Assembly: GCA_964252035.1 (NCBI GenBank) | Contig: OZ176211.1 | Length of the DNA: 64,000 nt | From: Podarcis erhardii | Lineage: Eukaryota | Direction: 5' to 3' (one strand) | Notes under the pieces: generated by a model | Databases searched by the model: none | What the model saw: only the letters and a program-made list of their open reading frames with translations | What the model was told of the DNA's origin: nothing | Program-made: the position numbers and the translations under genes | In this document: positions 5,161 to 13,429 of the stretch, piece after piece | Position numbering within the stretch: the first letter of the stretch is position 1 | Layout: the number at the start of each line of letters is the position of its first letter

Positions 5161-5541
5161 ATGTTTGGGTTTGGGTGCTTCTTGTTGTGTTGTGTGATTG
5201 AGAGAGTGGCTTGTGCTACTATTGGGGAGTCTTCAAGGCACAAGCCAGTGACTGGGCAGCTGCAAAATGGCGCTAGCGAAGAATCTTCAAGGCAAGCTGA
5301 TGTACCTTCTCCTACGCAGCCCTTGACTTTGTTACCCACCAGCTCTCCGCGGCCTGTTGCGGTGCAATGCCACAAAGACGAAATGGTGATAGCCGTTCAC
5401 AGAGACCTGTTTGGGACCGGGCAGCTGATCCAAGCTGTTGATCTCCACTTAGGCCTGCAAGGCTGCCGATATACTTCTGCTGGTGCTTCTGACTTGATTG
5501 TTTTTGAGGTGGGGCTTCAAGAGTGTGGCATCAATCTACAG
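5161..5541 (+). CDS. ZP3: ZP3-like exon 1 (signal peptide, start of ZP-N)
   Basis: [11 protein letters not shown]...[10 protein letters not shown]...ECGINLQ, then donor CAG|gtaatg. Confidence 0.9.
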
Positions 5542-8500
5542 GTAATGTGAGACTTGTGTACAAATAAGATCCTTCTTGTGTATATATATATATATATGTG
5601 TGTATATATATTATATATATATATATGTATATGTGTATGTGTGTGTGTGTGTGTGTGTATACAGTGGTACCTCGGGTTAAGTAGTTAATTCGTTCCAGAG
5701 GTCTTAACCTGAAGCACCACTTTAGCTAATGGGGCCTCCTGCTGCCGCCACACTGCCAGAGCACAATTTCTGTTCTTATCCTGAAGCAAAGTTCTTAACC
5801 TGAAGCACTATTTCTAGGTTAGCAGAGTGTGTAACCTGAAGCGTATGTAACCTGAAGCGTATGTAACCCGAGGTACCACTGTGTGTGTGTGTGTGTGTGT
5901 GTATTCCTATATGCACTTACCTTGGAGTAAGTCCTGTTGTATTCAGTGGGGCTTCCTACTTTAGAGTGTTATTCCTGTGGGAGTTTCTGCCTAAGGTGCC
6001 GAAATATCTCCCTCTTCCCAGCAGAATAAAATGTAGCAATAATAAGTTACATAATAATTTGCTGCCCTTTTTATGATGTCGCAAACCTGAAGCAGCTGCC
6101 TTATTCTGCCTAATGAATAGGCTGTCCTGTCCTGTAAACAGCACTTTGGGGAGCAATTTGCAACTGAAAACTTATGCTGAGTCCTGCAGGTGTATCTTCT
6201 CTGAAAATTAAAAGTAATCACATGAAATGTGCTTGTTTGAATCCATTATTAGGGATGGGGAAATATATCAACTTGAGTTTTTCAGTTTGTTTTTTTTTCC
6301 AGTCATAAGTTCAGTTTGCTACACACACATTTCCACATAAGTTTGTGGGTTGTTGTTTTTTTTTTTAAGCTCTCACATTTTAGTGTGAATTCTGCTTTGC
6401 GTTCGTGCAGCAGTTTCCCCATAATGCAGTTTTATGTCATTTTCACCAGTGTATCAATTTATGTGCATACTTCACGCTAGTGTTTGCATTCTTATACACA
6501 TTACTTGACTTTCGATTTGCATTGTGAAATTTGGAGAAGTGAAAGTTCCAAAGGACAACTCCATTTCAGTTCACATATTGCTTGGCAAGCGTGGACTGGT
6601 TCGTTTCATCCTGAAAAGCTGAGTCTAATTTCTCCTCCATCCCTGGCCAGGAATGTAGTTCCTTGAAAATGCAGCTCACCAAAGTTATGCAAAAATTAAA
6701 AACCGGCCCTTAATCATCCCTTGTGAAAATAGCCTGACCTTAGTTACGCTCACTCCACAACCACTTTGTATTAATAGGTAACGGGCAATAACTCTGAACA
6801 CTAAAAATACAGAATACAGTGGTACCTCAGGTTAAGTACTTAATTCGTTCCAGAGGTCCATTCTTAACCTGAAACTGTTCGTAACCTGAAGCACCACTTT
6901 AGCTAATGGGGCCTCCTGCTGCCGCCACGCCACCAAAGCACGAGTTCTGTTCTCACCCTGAAGCAAAGTTCTTAACCTGAAGCTCTATTTCTGGGTTAGC
7001 GGAGTCTGTAACCTGAAGCGTATGTAACCCGAGGTACCACTGTATTGAAACCTGCGGTGAAGTGAATTGTCTAAAGACTACCGGGGTGCTTTATTCTTCC
7101 AGACAACAGCAGACTCCCTGTTCTACCACACAAGACTGTACTATAACCCAAGCTCTGCAAGCGGCCCTGGAATTGTAAGAAACAGCTCAGTAGAGATCCC
7201 TATTGAGTGCCACTACCCGAGGTGAGCATCATAGGCCACAGTTCAATAACCCACTTGCATGTCAACAGCCATTGAGTTGTAATTTCTTTTTCTTCTTAGG
7301 GAAGATAAGGTGGGCAGCAATGGCACCAAGCCCACCGGGGTTCCCTTGACTTCGACAAAGTCTGCAGAAGGAGGGTTCCGCTTTTCCTTGCGTCTGATGA
7401 CTGGTAAGGGAGATTCCAAACCTTGAAGAGGACAAAACAAAACAAATTCCTTCCAGTAGCACCTTAAAGACCAACTAAGTCAGTTCTTGGTATGAGCTTG
7501 AAGAGGACAGTGTGTCAGATACTATTTTAAGTCTCCCTCCTCTTCTTCCTTTCCTTTGTTCATTGTGGATGACTATAGATGACTGGAGTGCCGAGAGGGA
7601 GTCTACTCGATATTGGCTGGGAGACTATCTCCATATCCAAGCAGACGTCGAGAGGGAAGGAGACCATTTACCTCTCAGGCTATTGGTCGATAGCTGTGTG
7701 GCCAAACAGACACCAGAGGAAGATGCCAGCTTACAATATGCAATTCTTGACTTCCATGGGTAAGATTGGGGAGGAGGGGAATTGAGAGAGAGACTGACTA
7801 CCTTTAGTGGAACCCCTGGAAAGGGATTGTTACATGTCATTCCAATTTCTGAGCAGTGTGAGACTCCAGGAGTTAGTGATGGCTCTCTCTGGTGAAAAAC
7901 AGCATAGGGATTTGAGGGGTAAATTCCTGTTAGTGACCCAATCCTCACAGAAAGCAGAGGTTCTCTGTCTGCTTGCCCAGAGATTCACACAGAATCACTC
8001 CTGCCTATACCGACCTAGAATCAATTAAGGCCGCAATCCTAATGCAACTTACCTGGGAGTAAGTCCCTTTCAATGCAGGAAGACATGCCTTTGAGTGGTC
8101 GTGGTAAGGATTGTGCTGTAAGGCTGCAGTTCTACACACACCTTCTTGAAAGTAAACACCCTGGGCTTGCTTCTGCGTAAACATACATAAGTTCAGGTTG
8201 CACGTTTACATTCCCAAATAATTGCCACACTGGATTAATGCTCAAGCGTTTTTTTCCTGACTGTACCATCTTTGGACCCAGATGCCTGGTCGACGGGAGA
8301 ATTCATGATGTGAAATCCGCCTTCAAAATCCCAAGACCGCGCCTGGAAACACTCCAGTTCACCATAGAAGCGTTCAGATTTTCTGGGGACGTAAGGAACT
8401 TGGTGAGAGGACTCCTTCTTCTCACTAGCTTCCAGGCCCAGCCCTACCATTGGGCAGAATAAAAGTGATGGCAAGGGTGTTGAAGGGCAAGGCTGGGTGA

Positions 8501-11500
8501 TCCACCCTGTACCTCCTTAAGAGTGCCTGCTGTCCTTAGTAAGATTCAGCTGGCTGTGCAGTCCACTTCTTTCCATGCAGGCCCTATTTTGCCTTGCCCC
8601 TGGACAGCTGGCCCTGCTTACTTTTTTCATTTACAGTGAGATGGTGGCATTCCCCACTCTGACCCTGTTTAATTTCCCTTCAAGATCTACATTGCTTGCC
8701 ATCTGAGAGTCGTTGCGGCCGACAAAGGACCAGATCCTCTAAATAAAGCTTGTTCATTTAACAGCCAAAGAAGCCTGTAAGTATCGTAGCTTGCATTATG
8801 GGAAAGACAGGACTTTGAGGAGTACTAACGTGACCTTTTTGTATGTATCAGTTGGCTACCAGTAGAAGGCTCCGAGGACATCTGCAACTGCTGTGAAACT
8901 GGGAACTGTGTATCATCTAAAGGATGGCCCAGCACAAACAACCCCAGCAATCGCCGTACATCAGAACAGAGGGAACAAGTGACTTCGGGGTCAGGTATGC
9001 TCTAAACCTGGGCGGTGGGGAAACCTGTGATCCACCAGGTGGTGTTAGATTCTACCTGCCACCAGCTCCTTCCAGTATAGCCAGGTATAATTGGGGGTTG
9101 GGTCACATCCTACACCATGTTTATAAAGCACATGACTTCCCCCAAAGCATCCCAAGAACTACAGTTTGCTAATGGGGCAGGGGGTAAACTCCAGTTCCCA
9201 GGATTCTGTGGGGGAAGCCTTGGGCTTAACACCAGTCCTGAAAGATGTACATTGGCTCCCAGTACGTTTAAAAGTGTTGGTGCTGACCTTTAAAGCCCTA
9301 AACAGCCTTGGCCGAGTATACCTGAAGGAGCGTCTCCATCCCCATCATTCCACCCCCACTAAGGTCCAGCTCCGAGGGCCTTCTGGTGGTTCCCTCACTG
9401 CAAGAAGTGAGGTTACAGGGAACCAGGCAGAGGGCCTTCTCGGTAGTGGCACCATCTCTGTGGAAGTTTTAATATTTGATGTTTTATCGTGTTTTTAATA
9501 TTCTGTTGGGAGCCGCCCAGAGTGGCTAAGGAAACCCAGCCAGGTGGGTGGGGTATAAAGAATAAATTATTATAAGTCCAGCGTATGGATGTAACTTTGT
9601 ACCCAAGCAATAACTGGCCTGCCACAGCCTCCCGACCCCTGCTCTCAACTTACTCTATGGCAGTAGCTCAGCTACTGAGAACTGCAAACTACACACTAGC
9701 TGGATATTCTGGAACCTTCTGCATCTCTAAACTGAGTGGGAATGCTTGCATGTTGTCATAAGTGATGCTAAGAGCAATGCTATACATTTCCCATATTTCA
9801 AAGGTAAAAGCCGTGCGCATGGAGTTTCAAAAAATGTACAGTATTGTTTTCCACATTGCACAGAAAGCTTGTGGGACCAGCTCTTGCCTTTAACACCGGG
9901 GATAAGCTTGTTTTAAGGCTCTAAAACAACTCGTTCTGTTGTTCGCTTCTAGCTATCATTGACATCTCAGAAGGGGAAGCTGAGGCAGACCTTCTGGTGG
10001 GACCTCTCTTAATCCTCGATGCTCCTTGGGACCTCCAGAGAGGGGAAGTGGAAACAACAGACATGGGGGCCCAAGGTAAAAAAGGAAATGGCTAAATCGA
10101 AGGCTTGTGCTATGATAAAGTAGGGGTGGGGATCTGTGGCCCTCCACCTAACTTCCTGCAAGTGGGGAAATCCTGGAAGGGGACAAGAAGGGAAAAATTG
10201 CAGGGGAGGTGGTCAAAACAGATGAAGCCATGACTCCCTCTGCAACTATTGAGTTCAGACTTCTGGTGATAATGATCAGTTCCTTCCCAGGCAACCTCCT
10301 GAGGTGGACTGAATGGAGAAGTGGAGGTGCAGAGAGAAATTGGGGGGGCTGGCCCCCCACACACAACAGGTGTGCAGCCCCCCCCCAACAGAGAAGAGAG
10401 GTTCTGCTTGACACTTGAGGTGTAGGTTTTCAGGACCCACCCTATTCTTGTGACTGTAACTTGTTTTAATTTTTTAAATACTGAATTTTGAATTCTTGCC
10501 ACACACACCCCGGGACTTGCTGGTGAAAGGCAGGCAACAAATTTCATCACCCTCCTTGTCTTCATGTCTATGTGGCATTCCTAGAGAGTTTCAAGCCACT
10601 GACCAATGGAAGCCTCTCATCTAAGTCTTGCGATGGGAAGAAATGATCAGTTTTCTTCAAGTTTTGTGAAACATATTTACTTTGGAATTGGTGGAATGAT
10701 ACTTCTTGCAGGAAGGGCTATTGATGACAAATGGCCTGGAGGCTGAGAACTTGCTATTTGCATAGAATGTACTTGTCTAGAGGCTACAACATACAAAACC
10801 CTTGCTAGTTCTATGTTCTGGAGGATGGATGGCGGCTAACAGATTGAGGTTGAATCCTGACAACACAGAAGTACTGTTTTTGGGGGACAGGAGGCGGGCT
10901 GGTGTGGAGGACTCCCTGGTCCTGAATGGGGTAACTGTGCCCCTGAAGGACCAGGTGCGCAGCCTGGGAGTCATTCTGGACTCACAGCTGTCCATGGAGG
11001 CGCAGGTCAATTCTGTGTGCAGGGCCCCTGTTTATCAGCTCTGTCTGGTACGCAGACTGAGACCCTACCTGCCTGCATACTGTGATGCATGCTCTAGTTA
11101 TCTCTCGCTTGGACTACTGCAATGCGCTCTACGTGGGGCTACCTTTGAAGGTGACCCGGAAACTACAACTAATCCAGAATGCGGCAGCCAGACTGGTGAC
11201 TGGGAGCGGCCACTGGGACCATATAACACTGGTCTTGAAAGACCTGCACTGGCTCCCAGTACGTTTCCGAGCACAATTCAAAGTGTTGTTGCTGATCTTT
11301 AAAGCCCTAAACGGCCTCAGTCCAGTATACGTGAAAGAGCATTTCCACCCCCATTGTTCTGCCCGGACACCGAGGTCCAGTGCCGAGGGCCTTCTGGCGG
11401 TTCATGAGTACTTAACTAAACTATACTGCTAGGCTAGGCCAGAAAGTTCAGTTTATATCTGTCTTGTTGTGATTCCTTTCTTAAAGGTGAATCTCATGTG

Positions 11501-13253
11501 ATAGAAGCCGAGGCTGACTCTACAGTTGGACGTCAGTTTATCCTCAAGGCAGACGAAGGACTTGGATGGCTCCTGGATTCTGATAAGACTGTGACAACAA
11601 CTGGTAAGGTCCTTTTAGAGAGCCAGTGTGGTGTAATGGTTAGAGAGATGGACTAAGACCTGGAAGAGCAGGGTTCGAATCCCCAACCAGCCTTTAAGCT
11701 CACTGGGTGACCTTGGGCCACAGTCACTCACCGTCTCTTAGTCTAGTTGTGAAGATGAAATGGGAAGGAGAAGCATGCACACTACCTTGATATCCTTGGA
11801 AGATAAAAGTGGAATATAAATGTAATAAAATAAATAGATGGCTCAATATAAGAGAATCCATAGATTCCCCCCCCCCCCAAGGCTCTTGCCTCTCAGTAAC
11901 TGTAGTCATGTCTTCTGCTCCACCTTTTGCAATTTTGCTCTAAGAAATCTGCTCCTATAATTACTACAGCTATGGTGATTTTCTTTCCTAAACCCATATA
12001 CTGGGATCATGGGAAGTGTTAGGGAGGGTGTCTACCCAAGTAAATTCTGAGGCCAGAATGGGATAGAAAAATGGGACCTGAAACAAAATGTTGCAGTGTA
12101 TATAATGCTGCTATTTAGGATTCAAAAACCACCAGTCAGTCAACTCCAGAGCAAAAACAATCCTCATTTGACTGTTTTTTTGGAGGGAATCCCTCTAAAG
12201 TTTGTGGGTGGGTGGTGCTGTTTAGGCTACATAAGGTCTGGCACTCACAGATTGGAAAGACAGTCGTACCTTGGATCCCGAACGCCTTGCGAGTCAAACG
12301 GTTTGGCTCCCGAGACCCGCAATCCCGGAAGTGGGCGTTCCAGTTTATGAATGTTCTTTAGAACCCGAACGTCCAACGTAGCTTCTGATTGGCTGCAGGA
12401 GCTTCCTGCAGCCAATCGGAAGCCGCACCTTGGTTTCCAAACATTTTGGAAATCGAACGGATTTGCAGAATGGATTCCATTCAAGTTCCAAGGTACCACG
12501 GTAGAGAGGTGAAGATCAGAATTATAATGAATGGCTAATTGTAGCTAACGCAGAACAAATCATGAATGGCTAATTGTAGCTAATGCAGAACAAATCAAGC
12601 AGTTAAAAGCAACAGGAATTGTAACTTCCTTCCTTCCTTCCTCCTCCTTTTTAAAGCCCTGTAAGACTTTTTAAAAAGCAAAATGGTGGCTTTGCCTCTG
12701 AGCCTCCAAGGTTGCTGTTCTTGACAAACTCTTTGACAAGCCAATGCCTTAACGCTCCTATTCCCTTGACTGTAGATGATGCACCACACACCAAATCTGA
12801 AAATGTTGTTGAGGCCAAGCTAACCTCTGCTACAGATGAAAGCTTGCGTGAACTGGCACCCCCTGTGGAGATAACAAAGTTGTCCCTGCAAGGTAATGGA
12901 CATAAATGAATGCATGGCACCAGTGGCGTAGCATGGGGGGTGCAGGGGGGGCCGGCCGCACCGGGCGCAACATCTGGGGGTTAGGGAAATCCACGAGTTA
13001 GGGGGCGCAAATCCACGGGTTAGGGGGCGCAAATTACTTGCCTTGCCCGGGTGCTGATAACCCACGCTACGCCACTGCATGGCACCGTTTTCTAAAGGGG
13101 TTCGGTAGCAAACCATGGGAGAGGGAGCTCTTGGTTTTAATACTTCTTAAACTCTTTTTAGGCACTGCATCACAGAAGGGGACTGTCCTGGAACGAATCC
13201 AAACCACAGCAGCTGCAGTCATGGTGCTTATCCTATTGAGCTGTATATTCTAG
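5161..13253 (+). CDS. ZP3: ZP3-type zona pellucida glycoprotein (ZP3/ZPC paralog), 11 coding exons, about 529 aa
   Basis: Exons 5161-5541, 7103-7221, 7300-7403, 7579-7759, 8282-8402, 8685-8776, 8852-8994, 9953-10075, 11487-11603, 12776-12892 and 13162-13253 are all GT-AG and join in frame (1590 nt including stop). Features: signal peptide, 4 ZP-N Cys, IHP FSLRLM, DFHGCLVDG and the ZP3-specific cluster [10 protein letters not shown]. Which paralog this is (ZP3 or ZP3-like) is not resolved. Confidence 0.9.
5581..5659. repeat. (TA)n/(TG)n microsatellite; (GT)n also at 5881-5902
   Basis: Read directly; the two arrays flank the MITE at 5662-5881. Confidence 0.95.
5662..5881. mobile_element. Tigger/pogo-like MITE family A; copies at about 2412-2629, 6817-7042, 15006-15231 (inverted) and 26847-29048 (split by L1)
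   Basis: TIR CAGTGGTACCTC...GAGGTACCACTG, TA TSD, about 225 bp, shared internal ctgaagcaaagttcttaacc. Confidence 0.9.
6817..7042. mobile_element. Tigger-like MITE family A
   Basis: TIRs and TA at 6815-6816 and 7043-7044. Confidence 0.9.
7103..7221 (+). CDS. ZP3: ZP3-like exon 2
   Basis: ttcttccag|[16 protein letters not shown]...[10 protein letters not shown]|gtgagc; 119 nt. Confidence 0.92.
7300..7403 (+). CDS. ZP3: ZP3-like exon 3 (linker and IHP)
   Basis: [34 protein letters not shown]|gtaagg; 104 nt. Confidence 0.9.
7579..7759 (+). CDS. ZP3: ZP3-like exon 4
   Basis: DWSAERES...[10 protein letters not shown]...ILDFHG|gtaaga. Confidence 0.92.
8282..8402 (+). CDS. ZP3: ZP3-like exon 5
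   Basis: [40 protein letters not shown]|gtgaga. Confidence 0.92.
8685..8776 (+). CDS. ZP3: ZP3-like exon 6
   Basis: [30 protein letters not shown]|gtaagt; 92 nt. Confidence 0.92.
8852..8994 (+). CDS. ZP3: ZP3-like exon 7 (Cys cluster, degenerate furin site)
   Basis: [47 protein letters not shown]|gtatgc. Confidence 0.9.
9136..9217. repeat. Short hairpin repeat
   Basis: 32-nt arms cttcccccaaagcatcccaagaactacagttt and aaactccagttcccaggattctgtgggggaag. Confidence 0.7.
9227..9573 (+). mobile_element. L2-clade 3' fragment with internal deletions (ZP3 intron 7)
   Basis: LKDVHWLPV...FKALNSLG; same tail as the 3048 copy. Confidence 0.85.
9953..10075 (+). CDS. ZP3: ZP3-like exon 8 (canonical EHP)
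   Basis: gttcgcttctag|[41 protein letters not shown]|gtaaaa; phase 1-1; not in the ORF track. Confidence 0.82.
10822..11403 (+). mobile_element. L2-clade ORF2 fragment, frameshifted and 3'-truncated (ZP3 intron 8)
   Basis: [12 protein letters not shown]...; [19 protein letters not shown]...[10 protein letters not shown]...HWLPV. Confidence 0.9.
11487..11603 (+). CDS. ZP3: ZP3-like exon 9 (second EHP-like exon)
   Basis: cctttcttaaag|[39 protein letters not shown]|gtaagg; phase 1-1; 117 nt. Confidence 0.7.
11618..11837 (+). mobile_element. MIR-like CORE SINE, starting 14 nt after the ZP3 exon 9 donor
   Basis: A-box gtgtggtgtaatggtt, B-box ggttcgaatcc, core gtgaccttgggc, aataaa tail. Confidence 0.75.
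12261..12501. mobile_element. Tigger-like MITE with internal palindrome
   Basis: CAGTCGTACCTTGG...CCAAGGTACCACGG; internal CTTCTGATTGGCTGCAGGA-GCT-TCCTGCAGCCAATCGGAAG. Confidence 0.8.
12527..12596. repeat. 35-bp tandem duplication
   Basis: ATGAATGGCTAATTGTAGCTAA(C/T)GCAGAACAAATC x2, one mismatch. Confidence 0.95.
12776..12892 (+). CDS. ZP3: ZP3-like exon 10 (stalk)
   Basis: cccttgactgtag|[39 protein letters not shown]|gtaatg; phase 1-1; 117 nt. Confidence 0.62.
12921..13077. mobile_element. hAT MITE in the last ZP3 intron
   Basis: Perfect 12-bp TIR CAGTGGCGTAGC; perfect 8-bp TSD CATGGCAC at 12913-12920 and 13078-13085. Confidence 0.92.
13162..13253 (+). CDS. ZP3: ZP3-like terminal exon (hydrophobic C-terminus)
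   Basis: ctctttttag|[30 protein letters not shown]; phase 1 matches upstream exons. Confidence 0.65.
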
Positions 13254-13429
13254 ATACGTAGATAAATCCATTTGCTTGTATATTGAAAATGGAGGGGTTT
13301 TTTTCTTGCAGCCTGAAACTGTAAAGCCGGCAAGAATTGTTTATGTAATGTCTGCTGCACAAGCAAAGCTTGAGGCCAGGTGGTTCATCCTCTGCAAGGG
13401 CTTACGCAAAATGGAAAACTGAAATGAAA

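What the first reader, a model, noticed from the sequence alone, without database searches (positions are those of the whole stretch)
9953..11603. ZP3 paralog with a tandemly duplicated external hydrophobic patch (EHP) exon
Seen: two separate phase 1-1 exons each encode an EHP-like motif, [16 protein letters not shown] (9976-10023) and [16 protein letters not shown] (11504-11551). They share 33/48 nt by hand count and both have intact AG/GT sites. Established: ZP proteins normally have one EHP after the furin site; it pairs with the ZP-C/IHP and blocks premature polymerisation. Inference: the exon was duplicated, and the second copy lost hydrophobic residues (PLL to RQF). Both exons are symmetric, so they can be included, skipped or used mutually exclusively without frameshift, which could switch polymerisation competence by splicing. 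Exon 8 has a weak donor (gtaaaa); read-through gives AQGKKGNG-stop, a possible secreted isoform. Neither exon appears in the ORF track.
Basis: partly seen in the sequence, partly recalled or inferred. Interest (0 to 1): 0.8.

Follow-up and report, generated by a model that had tools for sequence, protein, structure and literature searches.

The report
Duplicated EHP exon in squamate ZP3
A wall-lizard egg-coat gene (a ZP3 paralog) has two neighbouring exons that both descend from the exon for the 'external hydrophobic patch'; related lizards splice both into the same mRNA, and geckos, skinks, lacertids and snakes all keep both, so this is an old conserved protein feature, not a splicing switch or a dead copy.

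Summary
Exons 9953-10075 and 11487-11603 are both phase 1-1 with intact AG/GT sites. They encode [16 protein letters not shown] and [16 protein letters not shown] (33/48 nt, 10/16 aa identical). This is far beyond chance: 0/2000 codon shuffles reach it, profile-profile P about 1e-4, 0/300 column shuffles.

The gene is an intact 11-exon, 529-aa ZP3 paralog, 95-96% identical to Podarcis ZP3-like proteins.

The splicing-switch reading is not supported. Spliced transcript contigs from two related organisms join exon 7-A-B-C-last in one molecule. Every full-length annotated ortholog carries both motifs in tandem: Podarcis, Zootoca, Rhineura, Hemicordylus, Tiliqua, a gecko, a python and a rattlesnake.

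These proteins form one clade (SH-aLRT 99), so the duplication predates crown squamates. Exon B keeps its frame and splice sites, with pN/pS 0.57 against 0.49 for exon A.

AlphaFold2 places only motif 1 as the confident beta-strand (pLDDT 88-90). Motif 2 is low-confidence.

The clade also lacks a conserved furin site and ends in a hydrophobic tail with no cytoplasmic tail.

Verdict: a real, ancient, constitutively included second EHP-like module in the C-terminal propeptide, function untested. The scan had noted this gene's GPI-like tail before (s1-232478).

The parts
5161..5541 (+). Exon 1: start codon, signal peptide, N-terminal linker and first part of ZP-N
   Evidence: Open frame. Pfam ZP-N E 9.7e-9. 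phmmer finds ZP3 relatives. Spliced model.
7103..8776 (+). Exons 2-6 (7103-7221, 7300-7403, 7579-7759, 8282-8402, 8685-8776): rest of ZP-N, the linker and ZP-C
   Evidence: Junctions chosen by best match to the P. lilfordi protein; all are AG/GT. Together with the other exons they give a 1590-nt open CDS. Pfam ZP-C hits exon 4. The 8776/8852 joint is seen in RNA contigs.
8852..8994 (+). Exon 7: end of ZP-C (CNCCETGNC) and the degenerate cleavage region ([12 protein letters not shown], no R-x-x-R)
   Evidence: The joint 8994/9953 (GT..AG) is present in contigs of X1 and X7.
9953..10075 (+). Exon 8 ('A'), phase 1-1, 123 nt: canonical EHP exon
   Evidence: Spliced in X1 and X7 contigs. Orthologs aligned.
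9976..10023 (+). Motif 1, [16 protein letters not shown]: the canonical external hydrophobic patch
   Evidence: In the AlphaFold2 models the ortholog stretch is a beta-strand with pLDDT 88-90 (P0119 residues 392-405; gecko P0131 residues 337-349). L, G and P are invariant in 12 orthologs.
11487..11603 (+). Exon 9 ('B'), phase 1-1, 117 nt: ancient duplicate of the EHP exon, included in the mRNA
   Evidence: The joint 10075/11487 (GT..AG) and contiguous record coordinates A-B-C occur in the 1706-nt (X1) and 2667-nt (X7) contigs. It is intact in 9 squamate genomes (the window's and loci L001-L008). pN/pS 0.57, P 0.013.
11504..11551 (+). Motif 2, [16 protein letters not shown]: EHP-like and less hydrophobic, followed by the conserved AD..L.WLLDS
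   Evidence: 33/48 nt identical to motif 1. hhalign P 8.8e-5. V, I, E and G are invariant and F nearly invariant. pLDDT is below 50-57 in both models.
12776..12892 (+). Exon 10 ('C'), phase 1-1, 117 nt: spacer exon with no detectable similarity to exon B
   Evidence: (hhalign P 0.25). Spliced in X1, X7 and X10. It is the exon by which the annotated Liasis isoforms differ.
13162..13253 (+). Exon 11: [30 protein letters not shown] and stop. The hydrophobic C-terminus has no cytoplasmic tail.
Evidence: The joint 12892/13162 is present in X1, X7 and X10. The ortholog stretch is a helix at 511-531 in the model.

Best explanation
The window carries the intact Podarcis ortholog of a squamate ZP3 paralog. 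Its C-terminal propeptide was lengthened by an ancient tandem duplication of the EHP-coding exon. The duplication happened before geckos split from other squamates.

Both exons are ordinary, constitutively included exons of one mRNA. The precursor protein therefore reads: ZP module, degenerate basic site, EHP (exon 8), EHP-like module (exon 9), spacer (exon 10), hydrophobic C-terminal anchor (exon 11).

Shown here: the homology of the two exons, their joint inclusion in mRNA and in protein models, their conservation, and the clade.

Inferred: copy 1 keeps the canonical job, acting as strand G of ZP-C and locking the precursor until the propeptide is cut off. Copy 2 is a diverged, less hydrophobic but selectively maintained propeptide module. 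It is not needed to fill the EHP groove of its own ZP-C. Most likely it leaves with the propeptide, and while attached it serves as a second, weaker strand/cap or as a spacing or processing element. It is not a device for switching polymerisation by alternative splicing.
For: The gene model is 11 exons, all AG/GT, with a 1590-nt open CDS. It is 95.9% identical to P. lilfordi and 94.7% to P. muralis ZP3-like. ZP-N and ZP-C Pfam hits fall on window exons. The model's best fold match is chicken ZP3 3NK4 (E 1e-34).

Exon homology: 33/48 nt with 0/2000 shuffles; hhalign P 8.8e-5 and 0/300 column shuffles.

Joint inclusion: single contigs in X1 and X7 carry exon 7-A-B-C-last with GT..AG joints. Both motifs appear in the proteins of P. 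muralis, P. lilfordi, P. raffonei, Zootoca, Rhineura, Hemicordylus, Tiliqua, Sphaerodactylus, Liasis (all three isoforms) and Crotalus adamanteus.

Clade: 13 proteins form one group on a tree built without the tail (SH-aLRT 99), and its branching follows squamate phylogeny.

Conservation: exon B is open with splice sites in 9 squamate genomes (the window's and loci L001-L008). pN/pS is 0.57 (P 0.013), against 0.49 for exon A.

AlphaFold2, two orthologs: only motif 1 is a confident strand.

The role of the EHP as a lock is established knowledge (review PMC8391237).
Against: The RNA contigs come from related organisms (3-5% mismatches), not demonstrably from the window's species. The tissue is unknown, and contigs drop rare isoforms, so minor exon-skipping forms cannot be excluded.

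Two non-RefSeq snake models (Naja P0010, Crotalus horridus P0228) omit exon B, although it is intact in the Naja genome.

The window's exon A donor has A instead of G at +5.

The low pLDDT of motif 2 rests on a shallow alignment (about 12 tails) and on a monomer model. It is no evidence that motif 2 cannot dock in trans or after cleavage.

No functional data exist.
Confidence: 0.8

Rival explanations
1. One reading: the two symmetric exons are used alternatively (mutually exclusive or as cassettes), so splicing decides whether the precursor carries a strong EHP, a weak one, both or none, and thereby whether it can polymerise.
For: All three exons A, B and C are phase 1-1, so skipping keeps the frame. 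Cassette use of exon C is annotated in Liasis. Two snake gene models lack exon B. The window's exon A donor is gtaaaa.
Against: Contigs that span the region in two organisms hold both exons, and no skipping joint was listed. No annotated isoform in any of 10 species lacks A or B while reaching the C-terminus, apart from the two non-RefSeq snake models.
Confidence: 0.08
2. Motif 2 is a working second EHP. It docks as a beta-strand into a ZP-C groove, either its own after the first cut or a partner subunit's in trans. This would give a two-step or trans-acting lock on polymerisation.
For: It descends from the EHP exon. It keeps the E-x-E-A-D..[VI]G..F-I-L pattern in every lineage, and the gecko still has IGPQFIL. 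It is under purifying selection. The clade lacks the usual furin site, so processing must differ.
Against: AlphaFold2 gives it pLDDT below 50-57, with no strand, in two orthologs. Its hydropathy is much lower than that of motif 1. Its best-conserved part includes the extension AD..L.WLLDS, which the EHP lacks.
Confidence: 0.2
3. Exon B is a dead or decaying duplicate (a pseudo-exon) that is not part of the functional mRNA.
For: It is less hydrophobic than a normal EHP. It is absent from two snake models.
Against: It is spliced into transcripts. Its frame and splice sites are intact in 9 genomes spanning geckos to snakes. pN/pS is 0.57. It has several invariant residues.
Confidence: 0.01
4. The likeness of the two exons is chance or convergence. 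Exon B is an unrelated propeptide exon that happens to resemble the EHP.
For: Only 16-20 residues align, and hhalign probability is 60%.
Against: None of 2000 nucleotide shuffles and none of 300 profile shuffles reaches the observed scores. The two exons share phase, have nearly the same size and are adjacent. A gapped alignment extends over 32 residues. The gecko copy retains the GP of the EHP.
Confidence: 0.04

Closest known systems
Chicken ZP3 (PDB 3NK3/3NK4) and the canonical ZP precursor layout: ZP module, furin site, EHP, transmembrane domain, cytoplasmic tail (review PMC8391237)
   Same: ZP-N plus ZP-C with the C-x-CC motif. The ZP module of the P. muralis ortholog (P0119, 95% identical to the window's protein) is about 56% identical to chicken ZP3. 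An EHP of the type E-A-D-x-x-V-G-P-L-L-I-L follows ZP-C and is predicted as a confident strand.
   Different: A second EHP-derived exon follows the first. No R-x-x-R site is conserved before the EHP. The protein ends in a hydrophobic stretch with no cytoplasmic tail.
RefSeq 'zona pellucida sperm-binding protein 3-like' of Podarcis muralis (XP_077772479.1), P. lilfordi, P. raffonei, Zootoca, Rhineura, Hemicordylus, Tiliqua and Sphaerodactylus
   Same: These are orthologs: 95-96% identity for Podarcis, the same 11-exon tail structure, and both motifs present.
   Different: They are only automatic names. I found no paper describing the doubled EHP. Older models of P. muralis and L. agilis stop after exon 7.
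Canonical squamate ZP3 paralogs (for example P. muralis P0185, Rhineura P0156, Anolis P0215) and the ZP3.1/3.2/3.3 subfamilies of Feng et al. 2018 (PMC6262864)
   Same: The same family and ZP module, co-resident in the same genomes.
   Different: They fall in separate clades (SH-aLRT 97 and 99). They have a single EHP, an RFQR-type furin site, and a transmembrane domain plus cytoplasmic tail. I did not test which of ZP3.1-3.3 the double-motif clade belongs to.
IHP/EHP pair, reported as a 'duplicated motif' controlling ZP assembly (Jovine et al. 2004 PNAS, recalled from memory, not read here)
   Same: Short related hydrophobic strands that regulate polymerisation.
   Different: There the second copy lies inside the ZP module. 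Here the extra copy is a separate exon in the propeptide, downstream of the EHP.
GPI-anchored ZP-module proteins such as uromodulin and alpha-tectorin (bioRxiv 10.1101/2024.01.04.574255 for TECTA)
   Same: A C-terminal hydrophobic signal without a cytoplasmic tail, and release by a non-furin protease, are plausible here too.
   Different: GPI anchoring was not tested here. Those proteins have one EHP.

Membership tests
ZP3 (ZP-C) subfamily of ZP-module egg-coat proteins | ZP-N and ZP-C domains | tested here: met
   Pfam PF23344 hits window exon 1 (E 9.7e-9) and PF00100 hits exon 4 (E 3.9e-7). Both hit the ortholog P0119.
ZP3 (ZP-C) subfamily of ZP-module egg-coat proteins | Closest solved relatives are ZP3 structures, and the fold matches | tested here: met
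   phmmer against 3NK3 gives E 5.7e-113. Foldseek against 3NK4 gives E 1.4e-34 at 56% identity. Both tests were run on the ortholog P0119, which is 94.7% identical to the window's protein.
ZP3 (ZP-C) subfamily of ZP-module egg-coat proteins | Consensus furin cleavage site (R-x-x-R or R-x-K/R-R) between ZP-C and the EHP | tested here: not met
   The window has [12 protein letters not shown] with no R-x-x-R. Of 11 clade members only Hemicordylus has one (RSPR). Canonical paralogs have RFQR. This is a feature of the precursor layout, not of the fold, so family membership stands and the processing is atypical.
ZP3 (ZP-C) subfamily of ZP-module egg-coat proteins | One EHP after the cleavage site that pairs with ZP-C | tested here: met
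   Motif 1 is a 13-14-residue strand with pLDDT 88-90 in two AlphaFold2 models. An extra EHP-like motif is present, which is atypical.
ZP3 (ZP-C) subfamily of ZP-module egg-coat proteins | Transmembrane domain followed by a short cytoplasmic tail | tested here: not met
   The protein ends ...[16 protein letters not shown]-stop. The hydrophobic helix reaches the C-terminus. GPI anchoring itself cannot be tested here.
Alternatively spliced (mutually exclusive or cassette) exon pair | Transcripts that contain one exon without the other | tested here: not met
   The contigs of X1 and X7 contain both. No A- or B-skipping joint was listed. All RefSeq models contain both. Rare isoforms are not excluded.
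Tandem exon duplication | Adjacent exons of the same phase and similar length with significant sequence similarity | tested here: met
   123 and 117 nt, both phase 1-1, adjacent. 33/48 nt with 0/2000 shuffles. hhalign P 8.8e-5 and 0/300 shuffles.
Pseudo-exon / decaying duplicate | Stops, frameshifts or lost splice sites in relatives; not in mRNA; neutral evolution | tested here: not met

The most novel reading that the evidence does not exclude
The second EHP-like strand is a functional extra lock. In a ZP3 paralog that has lost its furin site and is probably lipid-anchored, motif 2 caps a polymerisation interface, either a partner subunit's ZP-C or its own after a first cut. Assembly of the squamate egg envelope would then need two release steps. 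This would be a natural two-EHP variant of the ZP polymerisation switch.
Probability: 0.2. Interest if true: 0.65.

Novelty: new variant of a known kind. Interest (0 to 1): 0.4.

Why it matters
The EHP is the key lock of ZP-module polymerisation in egg coats, uromodulin and tectorins. Here is a whole clade of ZP3 proteins that has kept a second, diverged EHP copy since before crown squamates split. In my recollection that split is roughly 200 million years old. The same clade has also lost the conserved furin site and the cytoplasmic tail. It is therefore a natural experiment on how the lock can be rebuilt.

The finding also corrects the more exciting but unsupported idea of a splicing-controlled polymerisation switch. 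In addition, it flags truncated gene models in Lacerta agilis, in an older Podarcis muralis annotation, and in Naja and Crotalus horridus.

The gene itself is already annotated in relatives, so the finding is a modest refinement for specialists rather than a surprise.

Tried and rejected
- PDB sequence searches with the exon A and exon B peptides alone gave nothing useful, so I could not align the motifs to a crystallographic EHP chain.
- Exon C as a third copy of the duplicated exon: hhalign P 0.25, rejected.
- An Rfam scan of 9500-10600, meant to explain the unspliced high-depth contig in X10, gave only a chance hit.
- One literature search for 'second EHP' and similar terms was swamped by journal identifiers and told me nothing.
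- The first attempt to refine exon junctions greedily failed. A pairwise-junction method replaced it.
- The look-up of encoding contigs had no record for the Liasis protein, so python DNA was not examined.
- A dead duplicate and chance similarity were both considered and rejected (see the rival explanations).
- Whether the clade exists in Iguania could not be tested. Only canonical ZP3 paralogs of Anolis, Sceloporus and Pogona were among the 120 listed hits, and no lizard genome collection was searchable.
Full report
WHAT IS THERE. The + strand of the window between 5161 and 13253 carries one intact ZP3-type gene. I located the exons from open frames, from tblastn with the P. lilfordi protein, and by choosing for each junction the GT/AG pair that best reproduces that protein. 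The model has 11 exons, all AG/GT, and a 1590-nt CDS with a single terminal stop. The 529-aa product is 95.9% identical to the P. lilfordi and 94.7% to the P. muralis 'zona pellucida sperm-binding protein 3-like'. The window is therefore from a Podarcis-like lacertid. Window exons hit Pfam ZP-N and ZP-C. The P. muralis ortholog is about 56% identical to chicken ZP3 (3NK3, E 5.7e-113), and its AlphaFold2 model matches 3NK4 best (E 1.4e-34).

THE OBSERVATION. Exons 9953-10075 and 11487-11603 are as described: phase 1-1, 123 and 117 nt, with intact AG and GT. They encode [16 protein letters not shown] and [16 protein letters not shown]. These share 33/48 nt and 10/16 aa.

The similarity is real:
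- It is the only match of >=31/48 to the first core on either strand of the 64 kb.
- None of 2000 codon shuffles reaches 33 (mean 23.1, sd 1.6).
- With ortholog alignments of each exon, hhalign gives P 8.8e-5 over 20 columns.
- None of 300 column-shuffled profiles approaches the observed score.
- A gapped alignment extends over 32 residues.

Exon 10 (12776-12892) is also 117 nt and phase 1-1, but it shows no similarity to exon B (P 0.25).

ARE THE EXONS USED, AND HOW? I laid Logan contigs of four RNA-like runs on 8600-13400. In X1 (organism A) one 1706-nt contig, and in X7 (organism B) one 2667-nt contig, cover the following:
- exon 7 (8852-8992)
- exon A (9951-10072)
- exon B (11484-11602 in X1; 11484-11598 in X7)
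- exon C (12775-12890)
- the last exon

In X1 the record coordinates of these pieces are exactly contiguous. In X7 they are too, apart from a single record letter between exons B and C, where the exon B piece stops at 11598. The joints 8994/9953, 10075/11487 and 12892/13162 are reported as GT..AG. So both EHP-type exons sit in the same mRNA. No contig skipping A or B was listed.

Caveats:
- The runs are from related organisms (3-5% exon mismatches).
- The runs are labelled RNA only by guess, although five removed GT-AG introns show the contigs derive from spliced RNA.
- Contigs hide rare isoforms.

In X10 (organism C) a 312-nt contig joins exon B (plus 35 nt of upstream intron) to exon C and the last exon. 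A separate 472-nt contig lies unspliced over 9888-10237 at depth 62, while exon 7 is uncovered. I cannot explain that contig. Rfam finds nothing there.

RELATIVES. A phmmer search with exon 1 found a 527-aa Rhineura protein. A word search with its C-terminal 198 residues, followed by one with the whole P. muralis protein, found the family. Both motifs occur in tandem in the proteins of:
- P. muralis, P. lilfordi and P. raffonei
- Zootoca
- Rhineura
- Hemicordylus
- Tiliqua
- the gecko Sphaerodactylus, where copy 2 still reads IGPQFIL
- Liasis (all three annotated isoforms, which differ only by exon C)
- Crotalus adamanteus

These are shown.

In genomic loci of P. muralis, L. agilis, Rhineura, Tiliqua, Naja, Sphaerodactylus, Hemicordylus and Elgaria, the exon-B ortholog is open. 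It is flanked by AG and GT, with a GC donor in Naja. This includes species whose gene models are truncated (L. agilis) or omit the exon (Naja).

I built a tree from the ZP module only, with the tails removed. It puts the 13 double-motif proteins in one clade (SH-aLRT 99), and the internal order follows squamate phylogeny with the gecko outermost. A long-branched Elgaria protein is sister to the clade. Its exon after the EHP exon begins EFMPVIES..., aligned with VIE...G of exon B. Two other clades hold the canonical squamate ZP3s. Tuatara, turtle, crocodilian and bird ZP3s seen here have a single EHP. The duplication is therefore at least as old as crown squamates, minus any lineages not sampled. 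No iguanian member was seen among the listed hits.

SELECTION. Pairwise NG86 values are noisy for 38 codons. I summed over three phylogenetically independent pairs: window-Rhineura, Tiliqua-Hemicordylus and Naja-Sphaerodactylus. Exon B has pN/pS 0.57 (binomial P 0.013 against neutrality) and exon A 0.49 (P 0.004). Exon B has invariant V, I, E and G, a nearly invariant F, and a conserved AD..L.WLLDS extension that exon A lacks. Its core is less hydrophobic than motif 1 in every lineage. The 'loss of hydrophobic residues' is thus an old, maintained state.

STRUCTURE. I ran AlphaFold2 on P. muralis P0119 (53-sequence alignment) and on the gecko P0131 (48 sequences). Both place motif 1 as a 13-14-residue beta-strand with pLDDT 88-90. 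Motif 2 has pLDDT below 50 with no secondary structure in Podarcis, and is a low-confidence helix over PQFILQTDKELSELL in the gecko. This supports motif 1 as the canonical EHP. It gives no support for motif 2 docking in the same groove of the monomer, but few sequences cover the tail, so the negative is weak.

OTHER ODD FEATURES OF THE CLADE. No R-x-x-R site is conserved between ZP-C and the EHP: SNRR in lacertids, SNHH in Rhineura, QRKQ in snakes, and only Hemicordylus has RSPR. The canonical paralogs have RFQR. The protein ends in a hydrophobic stretch without a cytoplasmic tail. In the established model, the EHP locks the precursor until the propeptide is removed at the furin site (PMC8391237). 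This clade must be processed somewhat differently.

INTERPRETATION.

Shown:
- An ancient tandem duplication of the EHP exon.
- Both copies constitutively present in the mRNA and protein models.
- Both copies under moderate purifying selection.

Inferred:
- Motif 1 does the canonical job.
- Motif 2 is a maintained propeptide module of unknown role.

I give about 0.2 to the idea that motif 2 is a genuine second lock acting in trans or after a first cut.

NOVELTY. I found no description of a doubled EHP in the literature I could search. The gene itself is already annotated in relatives. I therefore rate it a new variant of a known kind, of moderate interest.

Noticed in passing
window 9888-10237: In run X10 (organism C) a 472-nt contig lies unspliced across exon A and both flanking introns at depth 62. 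Exon 7 is uncovered in that run and the exon B-C-last contig has depth 2.9. Its first 120 letters do not lie on the window. It could be retained-intron RNA, another transcript or DNA. Rfam finds nothing.
   Followed up: partly
window 10076-10081: The exon A donor is gtaaaa in the window but gtaaga in P. muralis, L. agilis, Rhineura and the X10 organism. This is a species-specific G-to-A change at intron position +5. The effect on splicing in the window's own species is unknown, because no RNA of that species was identified.
   Followed up: partly
window 5164 (just after the ATG at 5161): There is a 9-bp in-frame deletion relative to P. muralis and L. agilis, changing MWYSKGFGC to MFGFGC and shortening the signal peptide's N-region by 3 residues.
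   Followed up: yes
window 8995-9002; P0122 and P0243: The L. agilis RefSeq model and an older P. muralis model end ...SGSGML. This is read-through of the exon 7 donor, so they lack the whole propeptide. Yet exons A, B, C and the last exon are intact downstream in L. agilis. These are probably truncated annotations rather than real isoforms.
   Followed up: partly
window 8852-8994 and orthologs: The double-motif clade has no conserved furin consensus before the EHP, whereas canonical squamate ZP3 paralogs have RFQR.
   Followed up: yes
window 13162-13253: The C-terminus is a hydrophobic stretch ending the protein (no cytoplasmic tail).
   Followed up: partly
P0228 (Crotalus horridus), P0245/P0246/P0121 (Liasis): The C. 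horridus model has seven tandem exon-C-like repeats (...SDDESDEIYSGGGDLNIETSPLEV...) and omits exon B. The Liasis isoforms differ by inclusion of exon C. So the spacer exon, not the EHP-type exons, is the variable part of the tail in snakes.
   Followed up: no
P0008 (Ambystoma), P0123 (Pleurodeles), P0060 (Elgaria; L006:15004-15084): Among 164 ZP3-family tails scanned, only these three carry two or more strict x-G-P-hydrophobic(3) motifs, within long C-terminal extensions. Repeated EHP-like motifs may therefore have arisen more than once.
   Followed up: no
window 9220-9470, 10830-11400, 12260-12480, 12930-13100: These are interspersed-repeat fragments in the introns. The first two belong to one family (shared ...LKGERLHPH...[14 protein letters not shown]... 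frames) and draw depths in the tens of thousands in the RNA-like runs. The A-B intron length varies about tenfold, from roughly 570 to 5850 nt among the species compared.
   Followed up: no
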